Source: Octopus sinensis
Lineage: Eukaryota
Length of the DNA stretch: 64,000 nt
Direction: 5' to 3'
Assembly (NCBI RefSeq): GCF_006345805.1
Contig: NC_043004.1
Span: 47,988,001-48,052,000, forward strand
A model generated the notes under the pieces. The model was given only the letters and a program-made list of their open reading frames with translations, was not told the DNA's origin and made no database searches. Below are positions 4,421 through 58,980 of this stretch, piece after piece; within the stretch, counting starts at the first letter, position 1, and every line of letters begins with the position of its first letter. A program made the position numbers and the translations under genes.

Positions 4421-6244
4421 AAGAGATGCATATATACAGTGGTTTATTGACGCGGAAATTCGATGAGAATTCATCAAAAGAAATGGTATCTTAGTCAATA
4501 TATCGATCTATTTCCTAGGATGCCAACATCAATCGAAGACAAACGACTCGCTAAATTGCTTCTGCACAAGATTCTTTCTTCTACGTAGTATTGTCAAACT
4601 AAGAATTTATCTCGCACATTTTACTCGTTTTATTTGCAGTTTTAGTTTTTGCTGCTATTTTTTATCATTATCATTGTTTTCAAGAAATGTGTTGTATGTG
4701 CATGTGCCTCATCCATTCATCTGTACATGTAGGTGTGGTGGGGCTAGCTACATAAATCTCTTGTAGGTCGAAGACAGATGACCCATAATACAGTACACAT
4801 AATATTATTTCTAACTTTGTCGCAAAGACTTATATTTTGCGGTAGGGGTGTTTTTGATTAGATTTCTTCTCATACATAACAGTTACTTATTTTATTGAAA
4901 CAGGGGAAATGAAATATGTACCCGGTCCAAGCTTGATTTGAACATGCATTTTTTTTATTATGCATTTTTTTTTTCTATTTATTTTCCCCAGTTTTCTTGT
5001 TATTGCGTGATTTCATTGCGCTACGCAGTACAGTTTTATGAGTCTTGACTACTTACAATATATTGTTTTAGTTTTGTACATTTTTATTGTGCCCGCGATA
5101 CATAACAGAAACGCGGCTCTTGATAGGGATGTTTTCTCTATATTGTATATGTGTTAGTCCTGGAACGTGGGTTATGTATTTGTCTTGTCTGTAATGGTTT
5201 TTAATCATTCCCAATTCAATTTTATAGGATTCTTTATGTTTTCAATCCATATTATGGTTGTCTTTATTTCTTGGTCTTTATATTTGAATAATTTCTCCTA
5301 ATCTTTTAGAGTTATTTTCTGTTTCCTTCAAAGAATTTTTTTACCATTTCTTTTACAGTTATTGTTTACCGTTGTCGCAGCATTTCACAGAGCTGCTCTT
5401 AGAAGGTAATTTGTTCAGGGATTATTTGAAGGAATGCTTTCAACAAAAGAGCTTAAGAATATTTCAATGTCTACCCCAATTACCTGAGATAGAAAAGGAG
5501 ATTAGTCTTTAGACATTTATTGTGTACATATATTTCCGCAAACATCCATTTTACTTTGTTTATTAATAGTTCAATACAGCCACTTCGATAGTAAGGTGGC
5601 GTTAGTAATATTGGTGGTAACAGTCACTATGCCATTGCAAAAACAAAAATAAGAATCTTGAAACCACGGAGACATTTCGAGACGAAAAGAAACAATTACA
5701 GTTTGACAAGCACATTAAAAAAAATGATGAAAACAAATTTAAATAACAATAACAAAAACACCGTCAGCAAGAACAATAAATCTTTTCCTATTCTCACAAG
5801 CCAAAACGAGGTACTAAATGTCAGTCGACTCTAAGTTTTTAAAACGTGAGTAAAATTTACGTGACAAAAGGTTAGTACTTCCTGATCAAGAGAATTCTTT
5901 CCAAAAAATAACAAGAACAAGTGATAATTCAGTTGCACAAAATAATCGACACTGCTTCCGTATATTCTCATTTAGCCTTACATACTCTGGCCGATGTATC
6001 AAATGATGTATGCTCTCTTGTCAGAGAAAGACTATATGCAAGTGTGTGTTTAGTCTTCATGACCGAGGATGATATGAGAGCAAGCAGAACGGGTGCATCG
6101 TACGTGTCATCACAAACTGCTTCTAAATTACGACCAGTTGGTGAATGACATCGTCGTTGTGATGGTCCCTTGAGGTCGAGGTTTTGATGGTCATTGTATG
6201 TTTTATGTTTTTTTGGTGGGGGGCTGCTTTTTGTTTGATTTTTA

Positions 6245-6877
6245 GGCGTAGGAGTGGCTGTATGGTAAGTAGCTTGCTTACGAACCACATTGTTCCGGGT
6301 TCAGTCCCACTGCGTGGCACCTTGGGCAAGTGTTTTCTACTATAGCCTCGGGCCGACCAAAGCCTTGTGAGTGGATTTGGTAGACGGAAACTGAAAGAAG
6401 CCCGTCGTATATATGTTACGTCCTGTTTTTGTCACATTTTTTTTCCTTGTTGTTACCCCTCTGCAAAGGAATTTTATTTAATTCTTTCGCAGGAAGGACT
6501 AGTTCGACGAGTCGTATTCTGTACTCACCTTCGAAACACGCAGGAGTTGAACGAGGGGCAGCTGATGAAGGGGATTTTTCCTTGTGTAGTTGTCTTGTAC
6601 TCTGTTTTTTCGTTGTTAAAAAAATTGTCCGTTCCATGCTTGTTTTTACTTTTTCGTTTCTCGTTGAGTTCTACGTCTATTTATGGTGTCCTGTACTCAC
6701 GTATATATATTTATATATGCATGTATATATATACATGTAGATGTAGGTACGTACATATATGTTTGTACGTATACATATATTTTATTTATTACACTATTGT
6801 ATGACTGAGCGCCCTCGCGTCGATTCGATTCGATTCGTTTCGTTTCGTTTCGTTTCTTCTTCTTCTCTAAGCTGGTT

Positions 6878-16206: not shown

Positions 16207-16929
16207 GAATGTATATGCATACATATATATGTGTATATATATATGTGTGTGTGTGTGTAGGCATATATGTATATAAATACATTCATATATATATATATAT
16301 ATATATATATAAAGAGAGAGAGAGAGAGAGAGAGTGGAAGAGAGAACTAGATAGGGATGAGGCGGTAAAAATATAGTGAGAGAATATTTGACGAGGAGAT
16401 ACTGGTTGTTGATTATCATCTGTCATTGAGAATTAATGGATTCCATTTTATTGATGACATATTCCTACTTAATTTCAAGTCAGCGTTGGTTGTTCATAAA
16501 TATCATTGTCTTGCAATTGTTGCTTTTGTTGTTGTTATTCAACTACAACTTCTACTACTACTACTACAACTAATGTTGCATCGCTTTTTTGTTATTTTTT
16601 TTAACATTTTCTTGTGTGCTTGATACTCGTGTCTTATCGCTTTCATTTGCTGTTCTTGAAAAAAAAATTATCTCTTTCTCTCCCTCTTTCCACTCTTTCT
16701 CTGCGCTCTCTCTTTTCTCTCTGATCTTTCTTTCTCTCCAACTCTCCCGCCTCTGTTTATTTTGCAAGAATTTTTTTTTTTATTTAATGCGTTTGTTATG
16801 TGACATATTTTTAAACGTATTCGGTACATCGTTTTGGCAGGGTTATAGAAATATTTAGTTTGAGACAAAGTTAAGTGAAACATTTGAAGCCATATCAGGA
16901 ATACGAATATAATATCACATAAAATTATA

Positions 16930-17400
<471 letters not shown>

Positions 17401-19908: not shown

Positions 19909-20140
19909 GGCGGCGAGCTGGCAGAAACGTTAGCACGCCGAGCGAAATGCTTAGCGGTATTTCGTCTGCGTTACGTTGTGAGTTCAAATTCTGCCGAGGT
20001 CGACTTTGCCTTTCATCCTTTCGGGGTCGATAAATTAAGTACCAGTTACGCACTGGGGTCGATACAATCGACTTAATACCTATGTATGTCCTTGTTTGTC
20101 CCCTCTGTGTTTAGCCCCTTGTGGGTAATAAAGAAATAGG
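19909..20140 (+). mobile_element. SINE family B, full length, in a (GGT)n tract
   Basis: Complete family B sequence ending AATAAAGAAATAGGT; GGT repeats on both sides. Confidence 0.95.
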
Positions 20141-20143
20141 TGG

Positions 20144-20174
<31 letters not shown>

Positions 20175-20725
20175 GGTGCTGGTGGTGGTGCTGGTGCTGC
20201 TGCTGCTGCTGGTGCTGGTGCTGGTGCTGGTGGTGGTGGTGGTGCTGGTGCTGGTGCTGGTGGTTGGTGGTGGTGGTGCTGGTGGTGGTGGTGGTGGTGG
20301 TGGTGGTGGTGGTGGTGGTGGTGGTGGTGTGGTGGTGCTGGTGGTTGGTGGTGGTGGTGCTGGTGGTGGTGGTGTTGGTGGTGGTGGTGGTTGTGGTGGT
20401 GGTGGTGGTTGGTGGTGGTGGTGCTGGGGTTGTGGTGGTGGTGCTGTGGTTGGTGGTGGTGGTGCTGGTGGTGGTGGTGGTGCTGGTGGTGGTGGTTGTG
20501 GTGGTGGGGTGGTGGTTGGTGGTGGTGGTGGTGGTGGTGGTGGTGGTGTGGTGGTGGTGGTGGTGGTGGTGTTGTGGTGGGTGTGGTGTGGTGATGGTGG
20601 TGCTGTGCTGGTGGTGGTGGTGGTGGTGGTGGTGGTGGTGGTGGTTGTGGTGGTGCTGGTGGTGCTGGTGCTGGTGGTGCTGGTGCTGGTGCTGGTGCTG
20701 GTGGTGCTGGTGGTGCTGGTGGTTC
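20141..20725. repeat. (GGT)n/(GCT,GGT) GC-rich trinucleotide array, ~585 bp
   Basis: Direct reading; source of spurious poly-G/V/W/P/T ORFs. Confidence 0.95.
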
Positions 20726-25940: not shown

Positions 25941-26156
25941 TATGTGTATGAAATCTTAAAACTGCTTCAAAAGAAAATGACAAAAAAAAATGAAACTAGA
26001 GAAATTATAAATTGCCATTCATACATCGTCTAATAACATTGATTGTCGAAGGAAACGGAAAAGGTGTTTCTGTCAGAAATCGCGTTCGAGTAACCATTAT
26101 TCTGTATTTTGTTCCATGTCTCTTGCCGTACATTACGACATACATATGTAAGTATA

Positions 26157-26572
26157 GGCGCAGGAGTGGCTGTGTGGTAAGTAGCTTGTTTACCAACCAC
26201 ATGGTTCCGGGTTCAGTCCCACTGCGTGGCATCTTGGGCAAGTGTCTTCTACTATAGCCTCGGCCCGATCAAAGCCTTGTGAGTTGATTTGGTAGACGGA
26301 AACTGAAAAGAAGCCCGTCGTATATATGCATAGATATATATATATCTATGCATGTTGTGTTTGTGTGTCTGTGTTTGTCCCCCTCGCATTGTTTGACAAC
26401 CGATGCTGGTGTGTTTATGTCCCCGTTACTTAGCGGTTCGGCAAAAGAGACCGATAGAATAAGTACTGGGATTACAAAAGAATAAGTCCCGGGGTCGATT
26501 TGCTCGACTAAAGGCGGTGCTCCAGCATGTCCGCAGTCAAATGACTGAAACAAGTAAAAGAGTAAAAGAGTA
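26157..26572 (+). mobile_element. SINE family A, full length
   Basis: GGCGCAGGAGTGGCTGTGTGGTAAGTAGC...CAAGTAAAAGAGTAAAAGAGTA. Confidence 0.95.
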
Positions 26573-32304: not shown

Positions 32305-32336
<32 letters not shown>

Positions 32337-32734
32337 GGCGCAGGAGTGGCTGTGTGGTAAGTAGCTTGCTTACCAACCACATGATTCCGGGTTCAGTACC
32401 ACTGCGTGGCATCTTGGGCAAGTGTCTTCTGCTATAGCCCCGGGCCGACCAATGCCTTGTGAGTGGATTTGGTAGACGGAAATTGAAAGAAGCCTGTTGT
32501 ATATATATATATATGTATGTGTGTGTATATGTTTGTGTGTCTGTGTTTGTCCCCCTAGCATTGCTTGACAACCGATGCTGGTGTGTTTATGTCCCCGTCA
32601 CTTAGCGGTTCGGCAAAAAGAGACCGATAGAATAAGTACTGGCTTATGAAGAATAACTCCCGGGGTCGAGTTGCTCGACTAAAGGCGGTGCTCCAGCATG
32701 GCCGCAGTCAAATGACTGAAACAAGTAAAAAAAA

Positions 32735-45784: not shown

Positions 45785-45797
45785 TGTATTTGTCATA

Positions 45798-46212
45798 GGT
45801 GCAGGAGTGGCTGTGTGGTAAGTAGCTTGTTTACCAACCGCTTGGTTCCGGGTTCAGTCCCACTGCGTGGCACCTTGGGCAAGTGTCCTCTGCTATAGCC
45901 TCGGGCCGACCAAAGCCTTGTGAGTGGATTTGGTAGACGGAAACTGAAAGAAGCCCGTCGTATATATATGTGTATATATTTATGTATGTGTCTGTATATG
46001 TTTGTGTGTCTGTGTTTGTCCCCCTGGCATTGCTTGACAACCGATGCTGGTGTGTTTATGTCCCCGTTACTTAGCGGTTCGGCAAAAGAGACCGATACAA
46101 TAAGTACTGGGCTTACAAAAGAATAAGTCCCGGGGTCGAGTTGCTCGATTAAAAGGCGGTGCTCCAACATGGCCACAGTCAAATGACAGAAACAAGTAAA
46201 AGAAAAAAAAAA
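45798..46212 (+). mobile_element. SINE family A, full length
   Basis: Complete copy abutting the SINE B TSD. Confidence 0.95.
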
Positions 46213-48704: not shown

Positions 48705-50012
48705 ATGAACAATCCAGACATATTCTGCTACATTTGTGGCACGTATGTTGTCATTAAACAGAGACAAAATATAACTGATCTTGTAAAAACAAAATCTACA
48801 CCAGCCTTATTTTGGTATTTAACTCGGTGATAAAGACAAATCTTGGACTCCCCACAAAGCATGTTGTACTTGTGTGGAGGGGCTGAGACTCTGGAAAGAC
48901 TCTGGAAATAAAAGTAAATGCCTTCTGGAATACCATTGGTGGGGCGAGAGCCGAGTAAGCACGTTGACGATTGTTATTTCTGCATTATTAAAGTTGATGA
49001 GTAAAGTGCAAAAAATAAACTTAAGATAGTATATTATAGTTAATACCTAGGTTATACGTCCTATTGCACATGAGTCTGACATTCCAGTTCCTCTTCCTGC
49101 TTCTCTCCCTCACTTGTTTTCGAGAATGTTACATCACATAGTGACGAAGAAGACAAACGTGAAAAAAGGTGATGACTACGCTCCTGATGAAATCGAAAGT
49201 TCACACTTACACAGGAAGAACTCAATGATTTGGTGAGAGATTTGAACCTATCAAAGGATACACTGGAACTTAGTTCTAGACTAAATATACATAATGCTAC
49301 ATAATGGGAATAGGGTTTCATCCACTCAAGTGGTACTTTCTGTACAACTAAAGGAGACGTATGAAAATGTAAAAAAAAAAACACTTTGTTAAATACAGAG
49401 TTTGAAGAATGCCACTGGCAAGTGTGTGGAGATTTCAAAATTATAGGAATGCTTTTAGGACAGCAGATAGGCTACATGAAAATTCCATGTGTCTCATGTG
49501 GATGGCATAGCAGAGCTAAAGAAAATCACTGGATGATTGGTAAAAACGGGCTACAAAGCAGACGTTTGTTACCTGGATCCAAAAACATTCTGCACGAACC
49601 CTTGATTGAACCAACAAAAGTACTGCTACCACCTTTGCACATCAAACTGGGTTTCGTGAAACAGTTTGTTAAGTATTTTCCCGTAGTTGGATCATGTTTG
49701 CGATATCTCTCAAAAAAATTCCCAAACATAACCAGTGAAAAAATTAAAGCAGGAATATTTGTTGGTCCTGATATTCGTAAACTAATGAAAGACCCAGATT
49801 ATGAGAAATCCATGAATAAATCTCAAAAACAAGAATGGGTGAGCTTCGAGTGTATTGTCGAGAACTTAATCGGAAGCAATAAGTGTTCAAATTACAAATT
49901 CATAGTTGATACCATGTTGCAAAATTTCAAAATCTTGGGTGCAACATTAGTATTAAAATGCACTTTCTTCACTCACACCTCGGCTATTTTCCGGAGAACC
50001 TTGGCAATCTAA
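48705..50012 (+). mobile_element. DNA-transposon transposase pseudogene, Chapaev3 (CMC)-like
   Basis: NNPDIFCYICG...LGDKDKSWTPHKACCTC at 48705-48890; ORF 49386-50012 CGDFKIIGMLLGQQ.GY.KIPC...PPLHIKLGFVKQFVK...GIFVGPDIRKLM. Family assigned from remembered motifs; cut at the 3' end by an RTE. Confidence 0.75.
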
Positions 50013-50634
50013 GTTAAGACAACGTACAAACAGGTCGAATAGTGATCGGCAGTGATGAAATAGAGGAGATAAAGGAATATGTCTACCTGGGACAGGAAGT
50101 GAATATGTGCCGAGATATCGAAAAGGAGATCTCACAGAGAGTAAGGGCCGGATGGAATGCGTTTAATGGCATAAGGGATGTGCTCAAGGGAAGGTTGGAC
50201 AGGACCACCCGCGCCATAGCACAGTTCTACCTGCAATGTTATATGGTAGTGAAACACGAGCTACAACAAAGAGAGAAGAACAGAGATTGGCAACGGCTCA
50301 ATGTGACATGGAAAGGTCAATGCTTGGTATCTCGTTGAGAGAGCACATCAGTAGCGAGGTCATTAGAGAGAAGTCGGCGTGAAGGATGTCATCGTAGAAT
50401 ATACACGCAGCAAGTTTAGATGGGCTGGACACGTCGCGGGGTCACCGATAATCGGTGGACCCGCGCAGTTGTCGTGTGGTACCCGCGCGAACGGAAACGA
50501 CCACTAGGAAGGCCCCCACGACGGTGGAGCTACGATTTCAGGAGGGCGATTGGGATCGCGTGGATGAGAAAGGCGCGATCCAGAGAGGAGTGAACATCGT
50601 GCTGTGGCCAGCGGTGTCGGTCAAGTTGATCAAG

Positions 50635-50640
<6 letters not shown>
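50005..50640 (+). mobile_element. RTE-clade LINE 3' end (non-BovB type) with (TA)n tail
   Basis: IEEIKEYVYLGQEVNM...EISQRVRAGWNAF; KFRWAGHVAG.TDNRWTRAVV.WYPRERKRPLGRPPRRW motifs; few frameshifts. Confidence 0.9.
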
Positions 50641-50710
<70 letters not shown>

Positions 50711-50910
50711 TATATATATACAAATTAGTAAATAAATGGCACACTAAGTACCGATATTTACTGGAATAGCGAACGTAAAAATACGACGCTAATGTGTAGC
50801 TTCACCGCGTATGTATTAGCAAAAATGCGTGTGTGCAACAAATTAGAGAAAAAAAAACCGTCTTACCTCCAGGGAGAACATCTGAAAGATGAAACACCCG
50901 GAAAAGGATA

Positions 50911-50988
50911 ATGTGGTACCTGCAGGTTTCAGGTTTTACAAGATATGTCTCTCACCCATATTTTGTTTTACCTTCATCAGCCAAGCAT
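50911..50988 (-). ncRNA. Type-I hammerhead ribozyme, unit 1
   Basis: ATG-CT-TGG-CTGATGA-AGGT aaa ACAAAATATG ggtgagaga CATATCTTGT aaa ACCT-GAA-ACCTGCAGGT-A^CCA-CAT; full core; predicted cleavage between 50917 and 50916. Confidence 0.9.
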
Positions 50989-51345
50989 ATACCAAGACGA
51001 AATCTACGATGTTACCACATTAATACTAACACACTCGACTGAAATGCGGAACGCCAACAGTACGAGAAACGGTGAAGAAGTTTCAAAATATCAGTAATGC
51101 AATACAAAGTATTGCCTTCCAGTAAAAAGTAGCCCGTGAGGGAAAAATACACAAATTAGTAAATAAATGGCACAACTAAGTACCGATATTTACTGGAAAT
51201 AGCGAACGTAAAAATACGACGCTAATGTGTAGCTTCACCGTGTATGTATTAGCAAAAATGCGTGTGTGCAACAAATTAGAGAAGAAAAAAAAACCGTCTT
51301 ACCTCCAGGGAAAACATCTGAAAGATGAAACACCCGAAAAGGATA

Positions 51346-51421
51346 ATGTGGTACCTGCAGGTTTCAGGTTTTACAAGATATGTCTCTCACCATATTTTGT
51401 TTTACCTCATCAGCCAAACAT
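51346..51421 (-). ncRNA. Type-I hammerhead ribozyme, unit 2
   Basis: Same motif; one A missing at the base of helix II (CTGATGA-GGT), a real variant or an indel error; site between 51352 and 51351. Confidence 0.75.
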
Positions 51422-51776
51422 ATACCAAGACGAAATCTACGATGTTACCACATTAATACTAACACACTCGACTGAAATGCGGAACGCTAACAGTACGAGA
51501 AACGGTGAAGAAGTTTCAAAATATCAGTAATGCAATACAAAGTATTGCCTTCCAGTAAAAAGTAGCCCGTGAGGGAAAAATACACAAATTAGTAAATAAA
51601 TGGAACAACTAAGTACCGATATTTACTGGAAATAGCGAACGTAAAAATACGACGCTAATGTGTAGCTTCACCGCGTATGTATTAGCAAAAATGCGTGTGT
51701 GCAACAAATTAGAGCAAAAAAAACCGTCTTACCTCCAGGGAAAACATCTGATAGATGAAACACCCGGAAAAGGATA

Positions 51777-51854
51777 ATGTGGTACCTGCAGGTTTCAGGT
51801 TTTACAAGATATGTCTCTCACCCATATTTTGTTTTACCTTCATCAGCCAAACAT
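51777..51854 (-). ncRNA. Type-I hammerhead ribozyme, unit 3
   Basis: Intact motif as unit 1 (TT bulge in helix I); site between 51783 and 51782. Confidence 0.9.
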
Positions 51855-52232
51855 ATACCAAGACGAAATCTACGATGTTACCACATTAATACTAACACAC
51901 TCAACTGAAATGCGGAACGCTAACAGTACGAGAAACGGTGAAGAAGTTTCAAAATATCAGTAATGCAATACAAAGTATTGCCTTCCAGTAAAAAGTAGCC
52001 CGTGAGGGAAAAATATATATATATATACCCACACACTCACACGCTCACATGCACAAATACATTCACACACAATAACACACGCTCACACACACAAATACAC
52101 TCTCGCATTTATACATGCAAATGTGTGTGCGCCTGTGCATACGTATATTTCAGTATAACACGATTAGTATTATAATTTCTTGTCTAAAACTAATATAAAC
52201 CAGAATCTTTGCAATTCTATGTAGGACAAGTT

Positions 52233-52627
52233 TGTTGTTGTTGTTGTTGTTGTTGCTGTTACTGTTGAGCGAAGCGGTCTTCGTCCCAGTAGTGGGAGAA
52301 GTCCGAAACGTGGTCCTTTGCTATTCGTAAGACCCGCAGAAGAGAAAGCAGGTCAACACCCGACACCGAGAGCATCGACGGATGGATGAATGCGCATCCA
52401 GGATCAGCGGTTGCGTAGGAAGTCGGGGACAAGAAACAAGAAGAAAGAGAGTGAGAGAAAGTTGGAGCGAAAGAGTACAACAAGGGTTGCTACCACCCCC
52501 TGCTGGAGCATCGTGGAGCTTTAGGTGTTTTCGCTCAATAAACACACACAACGCCCGGTCTGGGAATCGAAACCGCGATCCTCCGACCGCGAGTCCGCTG
52601 CCCTAACCATTGGGCCATTGCGCCTCC
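52233..52627 (-). mobile_element. SINE family C, third tail variant with (CAA)n end
   Basis: Family C head and body, then an unrelated ~180-nt tail ...GGGACGAAGACCGCTTCGCTCAACAGTAA(CAA)n. Confidence 0.88.
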
Positions 52628-52635
52628 AGTGTTGT

Positions 52636-53699: not shown

Positions 53700-53985
53700 A
53701 AAACTGACTGCAACCACTAAAGCAACATCTGTCTTTACAAACAGAATTACGCTATCAGCTATCATATTGCAGGGTGATAGTTTATCTGTAATGAATTCCT
53801 TGCCAGCTCTGATAACAAAATACAAAGGCTACACACTGGGATAAGCGGAAAACAATTATATCACTCATACATTCTTTTCATCGATGACCTAAAATTACAT
53901 TCAGGTAATATGACCAACATCAAGAGACAATTAGAACGAGTCACAACATTCTCATGGGATATGGGAATAGAGTTTGGGTAACATA
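53700..53985 (+). mobile_element. R4/Dong-like RT fragment
   Basis: ILQGDSLSV...THTFFFIDDLKLHSGN...DMGIEFG. Confidence 0.8.
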
Positions 53986-53989
53986 ACTT

Positions 53990-56400
53990 GAGATTTCTCA
54001 AAAGTAGCTGTCCCCTCATGCACAGTCCTTCTCCACCTGCTACGGTCAATAGCTATGCCCTCCCATGTGTCAGGAGAGATGCTAGCATCTCTCAAGGAAG
54101 CCTTCGGCAAGTCTTTATACCTCTTTTGGGGGTTATGTGGAGGTCGTTCTCCTTTAGCTAACTCTCCATAAAAGACTTGATTTGGCATCCTTGAATCCTT
54201 CATCCTGACCAGATGACCACTCCATCTGAGCCTTTGCCTCAATGCAAGAGCTTCTATACTTTCACAACGAGAGCTTTCCAATATCTCAAGATTACTGATG
54301 CGTCCTCCCACTTAATACCATAGATCCGACTGAGACACATCTGATGGAAACGTTTCAGTAGTTTAAGGTGGTATCGATAAGTGACCCACGTCTCGCAGGC
54401 ATAAAGAAGAGAAGAGAGCACACACGCCTTGTCCACCTTTATCTTTGTCTTCCTGCATATGTCTCGCCGATTCCAGAGGCGCCTTTCTAGCCTTTCGAAA
54501 GCATAACTTGCTTTCCTAATTCTGTATGGAATTTCAGTATCCAAATTGCTATATCTATTAACAGTGCTTCCCAGGTGGACAAACTGATCGACTATACCAA
54601 GTCATTTACCATACACGTAGATATTTAGTTCACTATACTGCTTACCAGGAGCAGGTTGGTACATGACAACAGTTTTCTTGAAACTGAGTGTCAATCCTAA
54701 GGCATGCAAACATCAGAGGATGCATTCAAACTGTGTTGCATATCAATCTCTGTGAGCACTACTAGATCACAATCATCTGCATAGAGGTAAATATCTTTGT
54801 TTTTGCAGCAAAACTATCTCTGCTTCGAAGGGATAGTAATTACAGTCCACGTGTTAAAATCCCTACCCTCTCTAGCATTAAAGGCACCCAGTACGATGAC
54901 TTTGTCTGCCCGAGGGATATTTCTTATAATGCACTTCAAATATTAAATATGCTGCCAGAAGTTCGATAATGGATATAAATACCATATCTGCAGTTTCTGA
55001 ATGCAATACACAAAACCATCGCAAAATATATGGCAAATAGGGTCAGTGCTAGATACTCCCCTGTTTCGCTCCATTTTGTATTGAGATGGGTTCCGCCATT
55101 TTATCTCTAATATTAACCCTACCCTTCACGTCTTCATGAGAAGACCTAACCAAAGCAAGGAACTTTTCGGGACACCCAAGTTTCTGGAGGACTTTTCACA
55201 GGGCATTTCTAGTAACGTTATCAAAGGCTTTTGTCAGATCGACAAAAACCTGATATAAATCCAGACCCTGTTCCACACACTTCTCCTGAAGCTGTCTGGC
55301 TCAGAAGATCACATCAGCAATGCCGCGTCCCACATGAAAGCCAGATTGACTTTCTGGAAGAACACAATCTGCAACGTGTTTCAGCAGACGATCCAGAAGT
55401 ACTCTGCATAAAACCTCTCTTACGACAGAAAGCAGTGATATTTCCCTATAGTTACCACAATCATTCCTGTTGTCCTTTCTCTTATATAAGACCACTATTA
55501 CTGTATATCTCAAGTCCTCAGGTACAGATTCACTAATCCATATCATACCAAACAAGGAGTGAGGTTGCGGCAGAAGTTTCTCACCGCCATGCTGCAACAA
55601 CTTCGCATGTATGCCATCCATACCCGGAGACCTCCCATTATTCATCCTTGAAGCAGCCACTGCAACTTCTTGCAACATTGGTGGTTCTGTGAGAGCTGCC
55701 TTCACAGGTAATTCAGGGATGAGATTGAAAACATCCTCACTAACTACAGACTGCTGATTCAAAAGTTCATCAAAGTGTTCTCGCCATCTTCGCAGAATGC
55801 CTTGTGAATAACGAAGAAGTTATTTACTATCTCTGCTTCGAAGGGATAGTAATTGCAGTCCACGTGTTAAAATCCCTACCCTCTCTAGCATTAAAGGCAC
55901 CCAGTACGATGACTTTGTCTGCCCGAGGGATATTTCTTATAATGCACTTCAAAGCATAGTAGAAAGAAATTTCTCCGTCATCAGTAGAGTACATAGTTGG
56001 AGTATACACACTCATCAACGTCACATAATTTCCTTTAACCAAAGGAATTCTCATAGACATAAGACGGTCGCTAATCTCAACTGGGAATTCATTCAACTTG
56101 TCCACAAGAGTAGTCTTAACAGCAAAAGTAACTCCAACCTCTCCTCAAAACTCTTCATCTCTCCCTTTCCAAAAGAATATGTATTTTCCATAAGGTTCTT
56201 TAAGATAACGATCTCCAGCTAATCTCGTCTCAGATAAAGCAACAACGTAAAGATCATAGCGTTGAAGCTCCTTCGCAACAAGAGCAGTCCTTCGTTCAGG
56301 ACATTCTTAGGACTCGCAGTCAAGCAGTGTTCGTACATTCCAACAGCCAATATTCAATATTTTATTTGGTTCTATCACAGTAGATTGTGATGATTTGGAG
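53990..56400 (-). mobile_element. RTE/BovB-like LINE, internally deleted and rearranged
   Basis: IGCWNVRTLL...ALSETRL (APE, ~56350-56200), SVYTPT, GRSPGMDGI...YREISLLSV (RT), LYADDC (~54780), RLRWSGHLVRMKDSRMP.QVFYGEL. Confidence 0.92.
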
Positions 56401-57799: not shown

Positions 57800-58150
57800 T
57801 TATTATTATTATGGCTGCCCCCTTGTTATCGAGTATGGCCATTGCACGAAGCTTAACTGTTACTGGTGCTGTGATCGAATGTGACTTTTTAGCCCAGCTA
57901 AAGATCCACAATGTCTTGCACAGAATTGGCAACTAAAACCTTTACCGGTAATAGCCGGCTGTAGTTGTAACTGGGCTTCATGTACCTCTGCATGTCGTTT
58001 AAGTCCTCCTGACGAATTACACTCTCTTCCACATGCCCGACAGATATGATTAGTATGGTATGTTACACCACCACCAGTGGCCAGGTTGTCACTCATCTGT
58101 CTCGCGTTATGACTACAAAGATGACTCTTGAGTTCAGCTTTACTGAGGCA
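57800..58150 (-). mobile_element. RTE 3' end (C2H2 fingers and tail)
   Basis: CRACGRECNSSGGLKRH and CQFCARHCGSLAGLKSHIRSQH*, then a 44-nt tail and (TAA)n; flanked by (CATA)n. Confidence 0.85.
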
Positions 58151-58274
58151 TGCATACATACATATATACATACATACATACATGCATGCATGCATGCATA
58201 CATACATACATACATACATACATGCATACATACATACATACATACATACATACATACATACATACATACATACA

Positions 58275-58306
<32 letters not shown>

Positions 58307-58880
58307 GATTTACTTACTCGAAGGAGTATTATATGATTAAATAGTAAAGCGTCTGGGTGATGGAGTTTTCCTGGCAAATATTCTAGAGAATATATACAGT
58401 TAAGAAAACAATCGCAATTGACCTGCATAAATGTGTTACTCCCCCCCCCCCCACACACACACACACTTTTACCTTAATTAACATTCACCATAACATCACT
58501 TAATAATATATTGTGAATATATACTGATAAGATAACAACAAAAACGATTGACCTAAAATATTTCAATTTAAAGGTCAGAAGGTCTGTTGGAAAATAATTA
58601 CCTGAAAACATTGAATCTGATCGTCTACAGTATGTATAAGCATACTGTGTGGATTTGAAGAGTTTAACTATTTCAACGCACACACGCTTGCACTATTAGG
58701 TACACATACTTCCATAGTTCTCTGTGTATGGATATATACACATTTACCCGCGTATGTATAAATATATACGTGTGTGTGAGTCAGTGAGTGTGTGTGTGTG
58801 TGTGAGTTTGTGTGTGTGAGAGTTTGTGTGTGTGAGAGAGTTTGTGTGTGTGAGAGAGTTTGTGTGTGTGTGTGTGTGTG

Positions 58881-58980
58881 NNNNNNNNNNNNNNNNNNNN
58901 NNNNNNNNNNNNNNNNNNNNNNNNNNNNNNNNNNNNNNNNNNNNNNNNNNNNNNNNNNNNNNNNNNNNNNNNNNNNNNNN
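58881..58980. other. Assembly gap (100 N)
   Basis: Run of N. Confidence 1.

What the first reader, a model, noticed from the sequence alone, without database searches (positions are those of the whole stretch)
50721..52015. Tandem trimer of a ~432-nt hammerhead unit: candidate circular-RNA retrozyme
Seen: three near-identical units in (TA)n. Each has, on minus, CUGAUGA, a long helix II (4 bp, A3/A3 internal loop, 9/10-bp stem), GAAA, palindromic ACCUGCAGGU, a GUA site and a bulged helix I (UGG/CCA plus AUG/CAU); unit 2 lacks one A at the base of helix II. Predicted cuts at 51783, 51352 and 50917 would release 431- and 435-nt monomers. The array is almost exactly 3.0 units, and its ends lie ~200 nt from the cleavage site, at an ATACA junction resembling the TA target. 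Established: metazoan non-LTR retrozymes are tandem type-I HHR repeats giving abundant circRNAs, reported at about 170-400 nt. Inference: a young, slightly larger retrozyme family targeting TA microsatellites; novelty in octopus is unverified.
Basis: partly seen in the sequence, partly recalled or inferred. Interest (0 to 1): 0.93.

Follow-up and report, generated by a model that had tools for sequence, protein, structure and literature searches.

The report
Hammerhead-ribozyme tandem repeat in TA microsatellite
Three head-to-tail copies of a ~432-bp non-coding repeat, each carrying a hammerhead self-cleaving RNA motif, sit inside a (TA)n microsatellite; this is the known layout of an animal "retrozyme", so it is a credible new example of a known kind, not a new kind of element.

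Summary
The array (50716/50721-52015) has 3.0 units of ~433 bp at 97% identity. On the minus strand, units 1 and 3 carry a complete type-I hammerhead (HHR). It has CUGAUGA, a long helix II with a 4-bp base, GAAA, the 10-nt palindrome ACCUGCAGGU as helix III, a GUA cleavage site and a bulged 3+3-bp helix I. Unit 2 lacks one A at position 9/10.1. A relaxed HHR descriptor hits only these units in 64 kb, against 0.017 hits expected by chance.

The unit has no long ORF and 37.7% GC. Its RNA folds much better than shuffles (z about -4 to -5). No Penelope-like element (PLE) reverse transcriptase or GIY-YIG gene lies within 10 kb. Both array ends fall at the same unit phase, an ATACA motif about 200 nt from the cleavage site, inside (TA)n, which is the target reported for some PLE clades.

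Best reading: a non-LTR retrozyme-type insertion, probably made by PLE machinery from a circular or multimeric RNA.

Cautions: no Rfam hammerhead model matches, pair 10.1-11.1 is A-U rather than G-C, and no second copy was found in any collection searched. Family status, expression, cleavage and the octopus origin stay untested. The unit size is within the published range.

The parts
50721..52015 (-). Tandem array of 3.0 units (TRF start 50716 if the ATATA overlap with the target is counted). Units in + coordinates: 50721-51151, 51152-51584, 51585-52015.
   Evidence: TRF; BLASTN; alignment A1; junction print.
50911..50988 (-). Hammerhead motif of unit 1. Helix I 5' strand from 50988; C3 at 50980; helix II 50973-50931; GAAA; helix III palindrome 50927-50918; A17 at 50917, with predicted cleavage between 50917 and 50916; helix I 3' strand to 50911.
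51346..51421 (-). Hammerhead motif of unit 2, damaged. One A is missing at position 9/10.1 (CUGAUG-AGG) and one G is missing in loop 2. A17 at 51352.
   Evidence: It is not found by the descriptor.
51777..51854 (-). Hammerhead motif of unit 3, complete. C3 at 51846, A17 at 51783.
50638..50720 (.). Left flank, (AT)~42 microsatellite with two interruptions: the target tract. It directly follows the 3' end of a truncated LINE.
52016..52027 (.). Right flank, the remaining (TA)6 of the target tract, followed by CA-rich low-complexity sequence.
51147..51151 (.). Internal ATACA junction motif (also at 51580-51584). Both array ends map to this phase: left end ATATA|CAAATTAG at 50716-50728, right end AAAAATA|TATATA at 52009-52021.
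   Evidence: read directly from the sequence.
50003..50637 (+). Context only: a 5'-truncated LINE reverse-transcriptase C-terminus plus 3' UTR that ends in the (TA)n tract.
   Evidence: Frame translation; single copy in the window.

Best explanation
The locus is a retrozyme-type element: a non-autonomous, non-coding tandem repeat carrying a type-I hammerhead, of the kind now thought to derive from the pseudo-LTRs of Penelope-like elements (PLEs).

Proposed mechanism; every step is inferred unless marked as shown.
1. The minus strand is transcribed across several units. This is probably Pol II or read-through transcription, because the RNA has five U>=5 runs per unit.
2. Hammerheads of neighbouring units pair through the 10-nt palindrome ACCUGCAGGU into a double hammerhead and cut after GUA. 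The motif and the predicted dimer helix are shown. Cleavage is not.
3. This releases 431/435-nt linear RNAs with 5'-OH and 2',3'-cyclic phosphate ends.
4. A tRNA ligase (RtcB type) closes them into circles. The circles settle into a stable branched fold in which helices I and III are replaced by an inactive alternative pairing. That fold is predicted here.
5. A PLE reverse transcriptase/GIY-YIG endonuclease nicks (TA)n DNA and starts cDNA synthesis at an internal site of the RNA, here the UGUAU/ATACA motif about 200 nt 3' of the cleavage site.
6. It copies three full turns and rejoins the TA tract at the same motif.

The three units have since decayed independently by about 1% each, and one deletion has damaged the unit-2 ribozyme.
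For: - Array anatomy: a 3.0-unit tandem at 97% identity.
- Complete HHR core and three helices in units 1 and 3, the only descriptor hits in 64 kb, against 0.017 expected.
- Architecture matches the metazoan type-I description in PMC4209133. Helix I has 6 bp (3+3 around a 2-nt bulge). Helix II has a 4-bp base, then an A3/A3 internal loop where loop 2 would sit. Helix III is short with a palindromic tetraloop.
- Cofolding two copies puts the 10-bp palindromic helix III in the MFE.
- No ORF above 50 aa in units 1 and 3, and no protein homologue.
- GC is 37.7%, below the <45-50% stated for retrozymes (PMC7229834).
- Monomer RNA: linear z = -4.8; circular MFE -114 to -118 kcal/mol with 61-62% of bases paired, z -4.1 to -4.7.
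- No RT or GIY-YIG domain in 40-64 kb beyond decayed LINE pieces.
- Both flanks are (TA)n, while (TA)>=8 runs cover only 2.1% of the window. (TA)n is the reported target of Neptune and Naiad PLEs (PMC8557442).
- A purified PLE nicks AT-rich DNA and starts reverse transcription internally in the RNA, downstream of its HHR (PMC11167929).
- The two ends share one unit phase within about 2-5 nt. By my own estimate that has a chance of about 1-2%.
- All variable sites are private to one unit, and two substitutions are CpG transitions, as expected for units that were identical at insertion.
Against: - No Rfam hammerhead model reaches E<=10, even on a 101-nt slice.
- Pair 10.1-11.1 is A-U, whereas G-C is called highly conserved (PMC4209133).
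- The hammerhead fold (-11 kcal/mol) is less stable than a competing local fold (-21 kcal/mol).
- Unit 2's motif is broken.
- Only one locus is known. There is no copy elsewhere in the window and none in the viral or metagenome collections or the protein-derived look-ups.
- There are no expression data and no covariation support.
- The PLE studied in vitro initiates at a site not homologous to the target (PMC11167929), whereas here the junctions show TA-like microhomology.
Confidence: 0.7

Rival explanations
1. It is a remnant of an autonomous Penelope-like element, not an independent retrozyme family. On this reading it is a tandem of pseudo-LTR sequence, left after truncated or abortive PLE insertion or after loss of the ORF, and the hammerhead is the ordinary pLTR ribozyme.
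For: [quoted passage not shown] Retrozyme consensus sequences in Xenopus match PLE termini (bioRxiv 10.64898/2026.07.22.740005). Helix II is long, as in PLE min-HHRs (7-8 bp, PMC4209133).
Against: There is no RT or GIY-YIG coding sequence, even decayed, in or next to the array. There are exactly three whole units with no ORF fragment, no inverted truncated copy and no 30-40-bp tail. The helix I/II/III proportions resemble canonical retrozyme HHRs more than min-HHRs, which lack helix III.
Confidence: 0.15
2. It is a local minisatellite that grew by DNA-level duplication (unequal exchange or slippage) from one inserted copy. The hammerhead is then an inactive relic, and no RNA circle or rolling-circle reverse transcription was involved in making the trimer.
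For: Only one locus is seen. Unit 2's ribozyme is already damaged. The variable sites are not depleted in the HHR: 3 of 14 fall in about 75 of 432 nt. Li et al. 2026 discuss local amplification of retrozyme-derived repeats.
Against: Unit junctions carry no TA repeat, only ATACA. Unequal exchange between the flanking TA tracts therefore cannot have made them. A single founding copy with ends at ATACA would still be permuted about 200 nt relative to the HHR cleavage site, so it still needs a circular or multimeric template. The star-like pattern of private changes fits one simultaneous origin.
Confidence: 0.12
3. It is a chance hammerhead-like motif in an unrelated tandem repeat.
For: No Rfam hammerhead hit. 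The 10.1-11.1 pair is non-canonical. A relaxed descriptor would give several hundred chance hits in a genome of a few Gb (scaled).
Against: The expected chance for one 432-nt unit is about 1e-4. That figure does not yet count the fourth helix II pair, the 9/10-bp helix II extension, the second helix I segment or the perfect 10-nt palindrome. The tandem and (TA)n context was not part of the descriptor either.
Confidence: 0.03

Closest known systems
Metazoan non-LTR retrozymes (Cervera & de la Pena 2020, PMC7229834), in particular the Mytilus galloprovincialis repeats of ~350-390 bp
   Same: Head-to-tail repeats of a few hundred bp. Low GC. No ORF, LTR, PBS or PPT. One type-I HHR per unit. RNA predicted to be highly self-paired. 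Dimers and trimers are common array sizes. The mussel HHRs also lack the archetypal loop1-loop2 nucleotides.
   Different: No sequence similarity could be tested. Here helix II continues beyond an A3/A3 internal loop into a 10-bp stem, and pair 10.1-11.1 is A-U. Copy number, transcription and circles are unknown here.
Newt/axolotl satellite 2 hammerheads (330-350-bp repeats)
   Same: Type-I HHR in tandem repeats. Weak helix III capped by a palindromic tetraloop. These ribozymes work best as double hammerheads between neighbouring units.
   Different: In the amphibians helix III has 1-2 bp and the loop-loop contacts are conserved. Here helix III has 3 bp including 15.1-16.1, the whole 10-mer is palindromic, and the peripheral loops are internal loops.
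Minimal hammerheads in pseudo-LTRs of Penelope-like elements (PMC4209133; PAc element, PMC11167929)
   Same: Long helix II, short helix I and palindromic 15.2-16.2/loop 3. AT-rich or (TA)n targets. The reverse-transcription start is internal to the RNA and 3' of the HHR.
   Different: [quoted passage not shown] The PAc start site has no homology to the target.
Dolichopoda cave-cricket pDo500 satellite and Schistosoma SM-alpha repeats
   Same: Genomic repeats encoding type-I hammerheads. pDo500 shows natural compensatory variation at 10.1-11.1 (PMC2837043).
   Different: Those are large satellite or SINE-like families with demonstrated transcripts. Here there is one three-unit locus.

Membership tests
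Hammerhead ribozyme, type I | Conserved core C3 U4 G5 A6 N7 G8 A9 / G12 A13 A14 / A15.1-U16.1 / H17 | tested here: met
   Units 1 and 3 have CUGAUGA ... GAAA ... A-U closing pair and GUA. Unit 2 lacks one A at position 9/10.1.
Hammerhead ribozyme, type I | Three helices around the core, with helix I open-ended | tested here: met
   Helix I has 3+3 bp with a 2-nt bulge. Helix II has 4 bp, an A3/A3 loop and a 9/10-bp stem. Helix III has 3 bp and a UGCA loop. The structure evaluates to -11 kcal/mol.
Hammerhead ribozyme, type I | G10.1-C11.1 pair (highly conserved, PMC4209133) | tested here: not met
   The pair is A10.1-U11.1 in units 1 and 3. Natural compensatory variants at this pair exist in pDo500 (PMC2837043). 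The effect on catalysis here is unknown.
Hammerhead ribozyme, type I | Match to the Rfam hammerhead covariance models | tested here: not met
   No hammerhead family at gathering score, at E<=10 on 1.5 kb or at E<=10 on 101 nt. My inference is that the 43-nt helix II, the bulged helix I and the A-U pair cause this.
Hammerhead ribozyme, type I | Site-specific self-cleavage | not testable with these tools
   Needs in vitro transcription of a monomer and a dimer.
Metazoan non-LTR retrozyme | Head-to-tail tandem of a ~150-450-bp (up to ~970-bp) unit with a type-I HHR in each unit | tested here: met
   Three units of 431-433 bp. The HHR is complete in two units and damaged in one, so the array fails the strict 'active' definition of bioRxiv 10.64898/2026.07.22.740005 (HHR in all repeats).
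Metazoan non-LTR retrozyme | Non-coding, low GC, no LTR/PBS/PPT | tested here: met
   The longest ORF is 50 aa in units 1 and 3; a 101-aa frame fusion exists only in unit 2. No homologues. GC is 37.7%. LTR, PBS and PPT signals were not specifically searched; no terminal-repeat copy of the unit occurs elsewhere in the window.
Metazoan non-LTR retrozyme | RNA with high self-complementarity | tested here: met
   Linear z = -4.8. Circular MFE is -114 to -118 kcal/mol, with 61-62% of bases paired.
Metazoan non-LTR retrozyme | Dispersed multicopy family in the genome | not testable with these tools
   The source genome is not in the collections. There is no second copy in the window. Pattern and ORF look-ups were empty or gave chance hits only.
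Metazoan non-LTR retrozyme | Expressed as linear and circular monomer RNA | not testable with these tools
   No transcript data are available.
Penelope-like element (autonomous) | RT plus GIY-YIG ORF between the repeats | tested here: not met
   Pfam scans of stop-to-stop frames of >=70 aa in 40-64 kb, and of a subset of the frames of >=85 aa in 1-40 kb, gave only weak LINE-type RVT_1 hits and no GIY-YIG.
Penelope-like element (insertion signature) | Insertion into (TA)n or AT-rich DNA | tested here: met
   The flanks are (AT)42 and (TA)6. (TA)>=8 runs cover 2.1% of the window.

The most novel reading that the evidence does not exclude
This would be the first described retrozyme of a cephalopod, if the window is octopus. 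Its hammerhead variant has an A10.1-U11.1 pair, and both peripheral loops are internal loops, with helix II extended by a 10-bp stem.

The locus would also preserve a junction-level footprint of how retrozymes integrate. It holds a whole number of turns around an RNA circle. The copy starts and ends at one TA-like motif about 200 nt from the ribozyme cut, inside a PLE-type (TA)n target. That would be direct genomic evidence for rolling-circle reverse transcription of a circular RNA by PLE machinery, with priming by microhomology.
Probability: 0.25. Interest if true: 0.55.

Novelty: new member of a known kind. Interest (0 to 1): 0.4.

Why it matters
Retrozymes are the one known route by which animal genomes make abundant circular RNAs with a ribozyme instead of by back-splicing. 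How they are copied back into DNA is still inferred rather than shown.

A clean, young, whole-number insertion helps with that question. Both of its junctions are readable, it lies in a (TA)n tract, and it is permuted relative to the ribozyme cut. That makes it a useful natural specimen for linking retrozymes to Penelope-like element machinery and for the circular-template model.

It also shows that Rfam covariance models miss this hammerhead architecture, so genome surveys based on them would under-count such elements. Beyond that it is an expected kind of repeat for an invertebrate genome.

Tried and rejected
- **Rfam.** Three searches were run: the whole window at gathering score, 1.5 kb at E<=10 and 101 nt at E<=10. 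None matched a hammerhead or any other ribozyme family on either strand; only chance low-complexity or miRNA-like hits appeared. A second ribozyme on the plus strand is therefore not supported.
- **Other copies through pseudo-ORFs.** Exact look-ups of the 50-aa and 101-aa frames found nothing. A homology search found nothing.
- **DNA pattern scans.** A 25-mer against viral contigs found none. A specific HHR pattern against metagenome contigs found none. A broad pattern (CTGATGA..GAAACCTGCAGGTA) gave 15 hits. That is about the number I expected by chance, and none has helices I and II.
- **Organism identification.** The neighbouring 215-aa frame belongs to a widespread animal transposon-type family, with a best hit at 52% identity. 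The LINE RT piece has a best named hit in a cestode at 39%, and an unnamed Logan contig matches at 77% aa and 80% DNA identity. Exact look-ups of two window ORFs were empty, and the run accession is not in the paper library. 'Octopus' stays unverified.
- **LINE mobilisation through a shared 3' tail.** I considered this and rejected it. The unit shares no sequence with the adjacent LINE 3' end, and the HHR lies on the opposite strand.
- **Pol III transcription.** Rejected as the source of multimers because of the U5-U9 runs.

Full report
**1. Observation.**
- Tandem Repeats Finder gives one array at 50716-52015 with period 433, 3.0 copies and 97% matches. It lies immediately after an (AT)42 tract at 50638-50720.
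- BLASTN of one unit against the window finds only the three units, at 97.4-100% identity, and no fragment elsewhere in 64 kb.
- A MAFFT alignment has 14 variable columns. With three sequences each change is private to one unit, at about 4-6 per unit.
- Two of the roughly seven substitutions are CG>TG/CA changes. That is what DNA-level decay after insertion would give.

**2. The ribozyme motif.** On the minus strand, units 1 and 3 read as follows:

5'-AUG[C/U]UUGG CUGAUGA AGGU AAA ACAAAAUAUG GGUGAGAGA CAUAUCUUGU AAA ACCU GAAA ACC UGCA GGU A|CCA CAU-3'

- This supplies every invariant core position: C3-A9, G12-A14, A15.1-U16.1 and H17=A.
- Helix I has 3+3 bp around a 2-nt bulge.
- Helix II has a 4-bp base, an A3/A3 internal loop, and a 9-of-10-bp stem closed by a 9-nt loop.
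- Helix III has 3 bp with a UGCA loop.
- The whole helix III segment, ACCUGCAGGU, is a perfect 10-nt palindrome.
- A17 lies at 51783, 51352 and 50917, so cleavage at all three sites would release 431- and 435-nt RNAs.
- Unit 2 lacks one A at position 9/10.1 and one G in loop 2, so its motif is probably impaired.

**3. Chance.** I wrote a relaxed descriptor: the core, at least 3 bp in each helix, helix II up to 80 nt, and loop 3 of 3-8 nt.
- It finds only units 1 and 3 in the window on both strands.
- It gives 0.017 hits per 64 kb in 300 second-order Markov simulations. I scale that to about 1e-4 for one 432-nt unit.
- Several features were not in the descriptor and lower the chance further. 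They are the fourth helix II pair, the long helix II extension, the second helix I segment, the palindrome, the tandem arrangement and the TA flanks.
- A chance motif is therefore very unlikely.

**4. Points against a textbook hammerhead.**
- No Rfam hammerhead model matches. This holds at gathering score on the whole window, at E<=10 on 1.5 kb, and at E<=10 on a 101-nt slice.
- The 10.1-11.1 pair is A-U, although G-C is described as highly conserved (PMC4209133). Compensatory variants at this pair do occur in the cricket pDo500 hammerheads (PMC2837043).
- The hammerhead fold of a 92-nt segment evaluates to -11 kcal/mol. A competing fold that pairs UGGUAU with GUACCA and buries the cleavage site reaches -21 kcal/mol.
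- Cofolding two copies places the 10-bp intermolecular palindrome helix in the minimum-energy structure.
- This matches the double-hammerhead mode described for newt, axolotl and PLE motifs with weak palindromic helix III (PMC4209133, PMC7229834).
- The proportions also match the stated metazoan type-I pattern: helix I of 6 bp, helix II of 4 bp, and a short helix III with a palindromic loop. Here both peripheral 'loops' are internal loops.

**5. The unit as a whole.**
- It is non-coding. The longest frame is 50 aa in units 1 and 3. A 101-aa frame in unit 2 is a fusion made by indels.
- These frames are not on record as exact products. The 101-aa frame has no homologue among 5.8 billion clustered proteins.
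- GC is 37.7%.
- The minus-strand monomer folds to -120.6 kcal/mol against -94.5 +/- 5.4 for shuffles, z = -4.8.
- As a circle it reaches -114 to -118 kcal/mol with 61-62% of bases paired, z -4.1 to -4.7. A long central quasi-rod forms, helix II is kept, and helices I and III sit in the inactive alternative pairing.
- The plus strand is also structured, z = -4.0, as expected for a self-complementary sequence.
- The minus-strand RNA has five U>=5 runs per unit, including U8-9. That argues against Pol III making multimers.

**6. Context.**
- Upstream lies a 5'-truncated LINE, with an RT C-terminus at 50003-50600 and a 3' UTR to 50637. It ends directly in the (TA)n tract.
- Downstream, 12 nt of TA repeat remain, followed by CA-rich low-complexity sequence.
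- Pfam scans covered all stop-to-stop frames of >=70 aa in 40-64 kb, and a subset of the frames of >=85 aa in 1-40 kb. They give only weak LINE-type RVT_1 signals and no GIY-YIG domain.
- The array is therefore not the terminal repeat of a local Penelope-like element.
- The window is rich in TA microsatellites, with 54 runs of (TA)>=8 covering 2.1% of bases. Landing with both flanks in (TA)n is unlikely by chance, at about 2%, but not extremely so.

**7. Junctions.**
- Inside the array the units join as ...GGGAAAAATA-CA-CAAATTAG....
- The left end reads (TA)n-ATATA|CAAATTAG, and the right end reads ...GGGAAAAATA|TATATA.
- Both ends therefore fall in the same ATACA motif, which differs from the TA repeat by one base. 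The insert is three whole units minus 2 nt.
- If the end phases were independent, agreement within a few nucleotides would have a chance of about 1-2% by my estimate.
- The ends lie 197 and 232 nt from the nearest hammerhead cut. The inserted DNA is therefore circularly permuted relative to the RNA that self-cleavage would produce.
- The simplest reading is a circular or multimeric template copied for whole turns. Initiation and rejoining would both be guided by TA-like microhomology. This is an inference.
- It agrees in outline with a purified PLE that nicks AT-rich DNA and starts reverse transcription inside the RNA, 3' of its hammerhead (PMC11167929). That enzyme showed no homology between target and start site.
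- It also agrees with the (TA)n preference of Neptune and Naiad PLEs (PMC8557442).

**8. Comparison with known elements.**
- The locus meets the structural definition of a metazoan non-LTR retrozyme (PMC7229834; bioRxiv 10.64898/2026.07.22.740005). Strictly, it fails the latter paper's 'active' criterion, because one of the three units has a damaged hammerhead.
- The unit size is not unusual. Repeats of 150-450 bp were already noted, mussel units are 350-390 bp, and consensus lengths up to 972 bp are reported.
- I found no paper in the library describing hammerhead repeats in cephalopods. A recent Octopus vulgaris repeat annotation lists Penelope-like families, including putatively active ones, but does not mention ribozymes (PMC13282606).
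- If it is octopus, a distance of about 1.2% from the unit consensus corresponds to roughly 3 million years. This uses that paper's calibration of Jukes-Cantor 0.09 for about 25 My, and is an inference.

**9. Verdict.**
It overstates the novelty in size, and its claims about a family and about targeting rest on one locus.
- The locus is best filed as a new member of a known kind. It has two modest points of interest: a hammerhead architecture that Rfam models miss, and unusually clean junctions that bear on how retrozymes are reverse-transcribed and integrated.
- Cleavage, circles, copy number and the PLE partner all remain to be shown.

Noticed in passing
window 50003-50637 (+): A 5'-truncated LINE (RT C-terminal region with the ...RWAGHV.../...GRP..RW... 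tail motifs, plus 3' UTR) ends directly in the (TA)42 tract that hosts the array. The TA tract may be this LINE's own 3' tail. It is the only copy in the window.
   Followed up: partly
window 49365-50009 (+): A 215-aa open frame with no Pfam match belongs to a large family of unnamed proteins. There are 302 hits at E<=1e-10, in spiders, moths, a sponge and many metagenome or Logan contigs, with a best identity of 52%. It looks like a widespread animal transposon-derived protein.
   Followed up: partly
window 53955-56144 (-): A decayed LINE on the minus strand. It has an endonuclease-like piece at 55830-56144, a weak RVT_1 match at 55304-55819, and an RT C-terminus at 53955-54601. Logan contig L016 (run SRR11869394) is 80% identical in DNA to 55176-55843. 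In minus-strand sense this LINE lies about 1.9 kb upstream of the array, so read-through transcription of the hammerhead strand is conceivable.
   Followed up: partly
window, e.g. 6242-6460, 16919-17140, 26154-26370, 32334-32550, 45795-46010; also 14746, 35470, 44560, 52442: Two dispersed short repeat families: 6-10 copies at 60-96% identity, and 4 copies at 87-93%. The first sits next to (TA)n(TG)n composite microsatellites and looks SINE-like. One copy of the second family (52442-52629) lies 430 bp from the array.
   Followed up: no
window 20139-20723: A (GGT)196 trinucleotide microsatellite, 83% pure. It accounts for the several overlapping 150-220-aa ORFs at this position, among the longest in the window.
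   Followed up: yes
window 58881-58980: A run of 100 N (scaffold gap) lies 6.9 kb from the array, so the assembly is scaffolded. The three units differ at 14 sites, which argues against a simple duplication artefact.
   Followed up: partly
window 57863-58309 (-): An open frame with C2H2 zinc-finger-like motifs (Pfam Zn_SUZ12 E=1.2e-5, zf-C2H2_jaz E=5e-4, both below their cut-offs), preceded by a microsatellite-encoded low-complexity stretch.
   Followed up: no
whole window: The density of TA microsatellites is very high: 54 runs of (TA)>=8, or 2.1% of bases, and 2.75% for runs of >=6. If PLE-type endonucleases prefer (TA)n, this genome offers many targets.
   Followed up: partly
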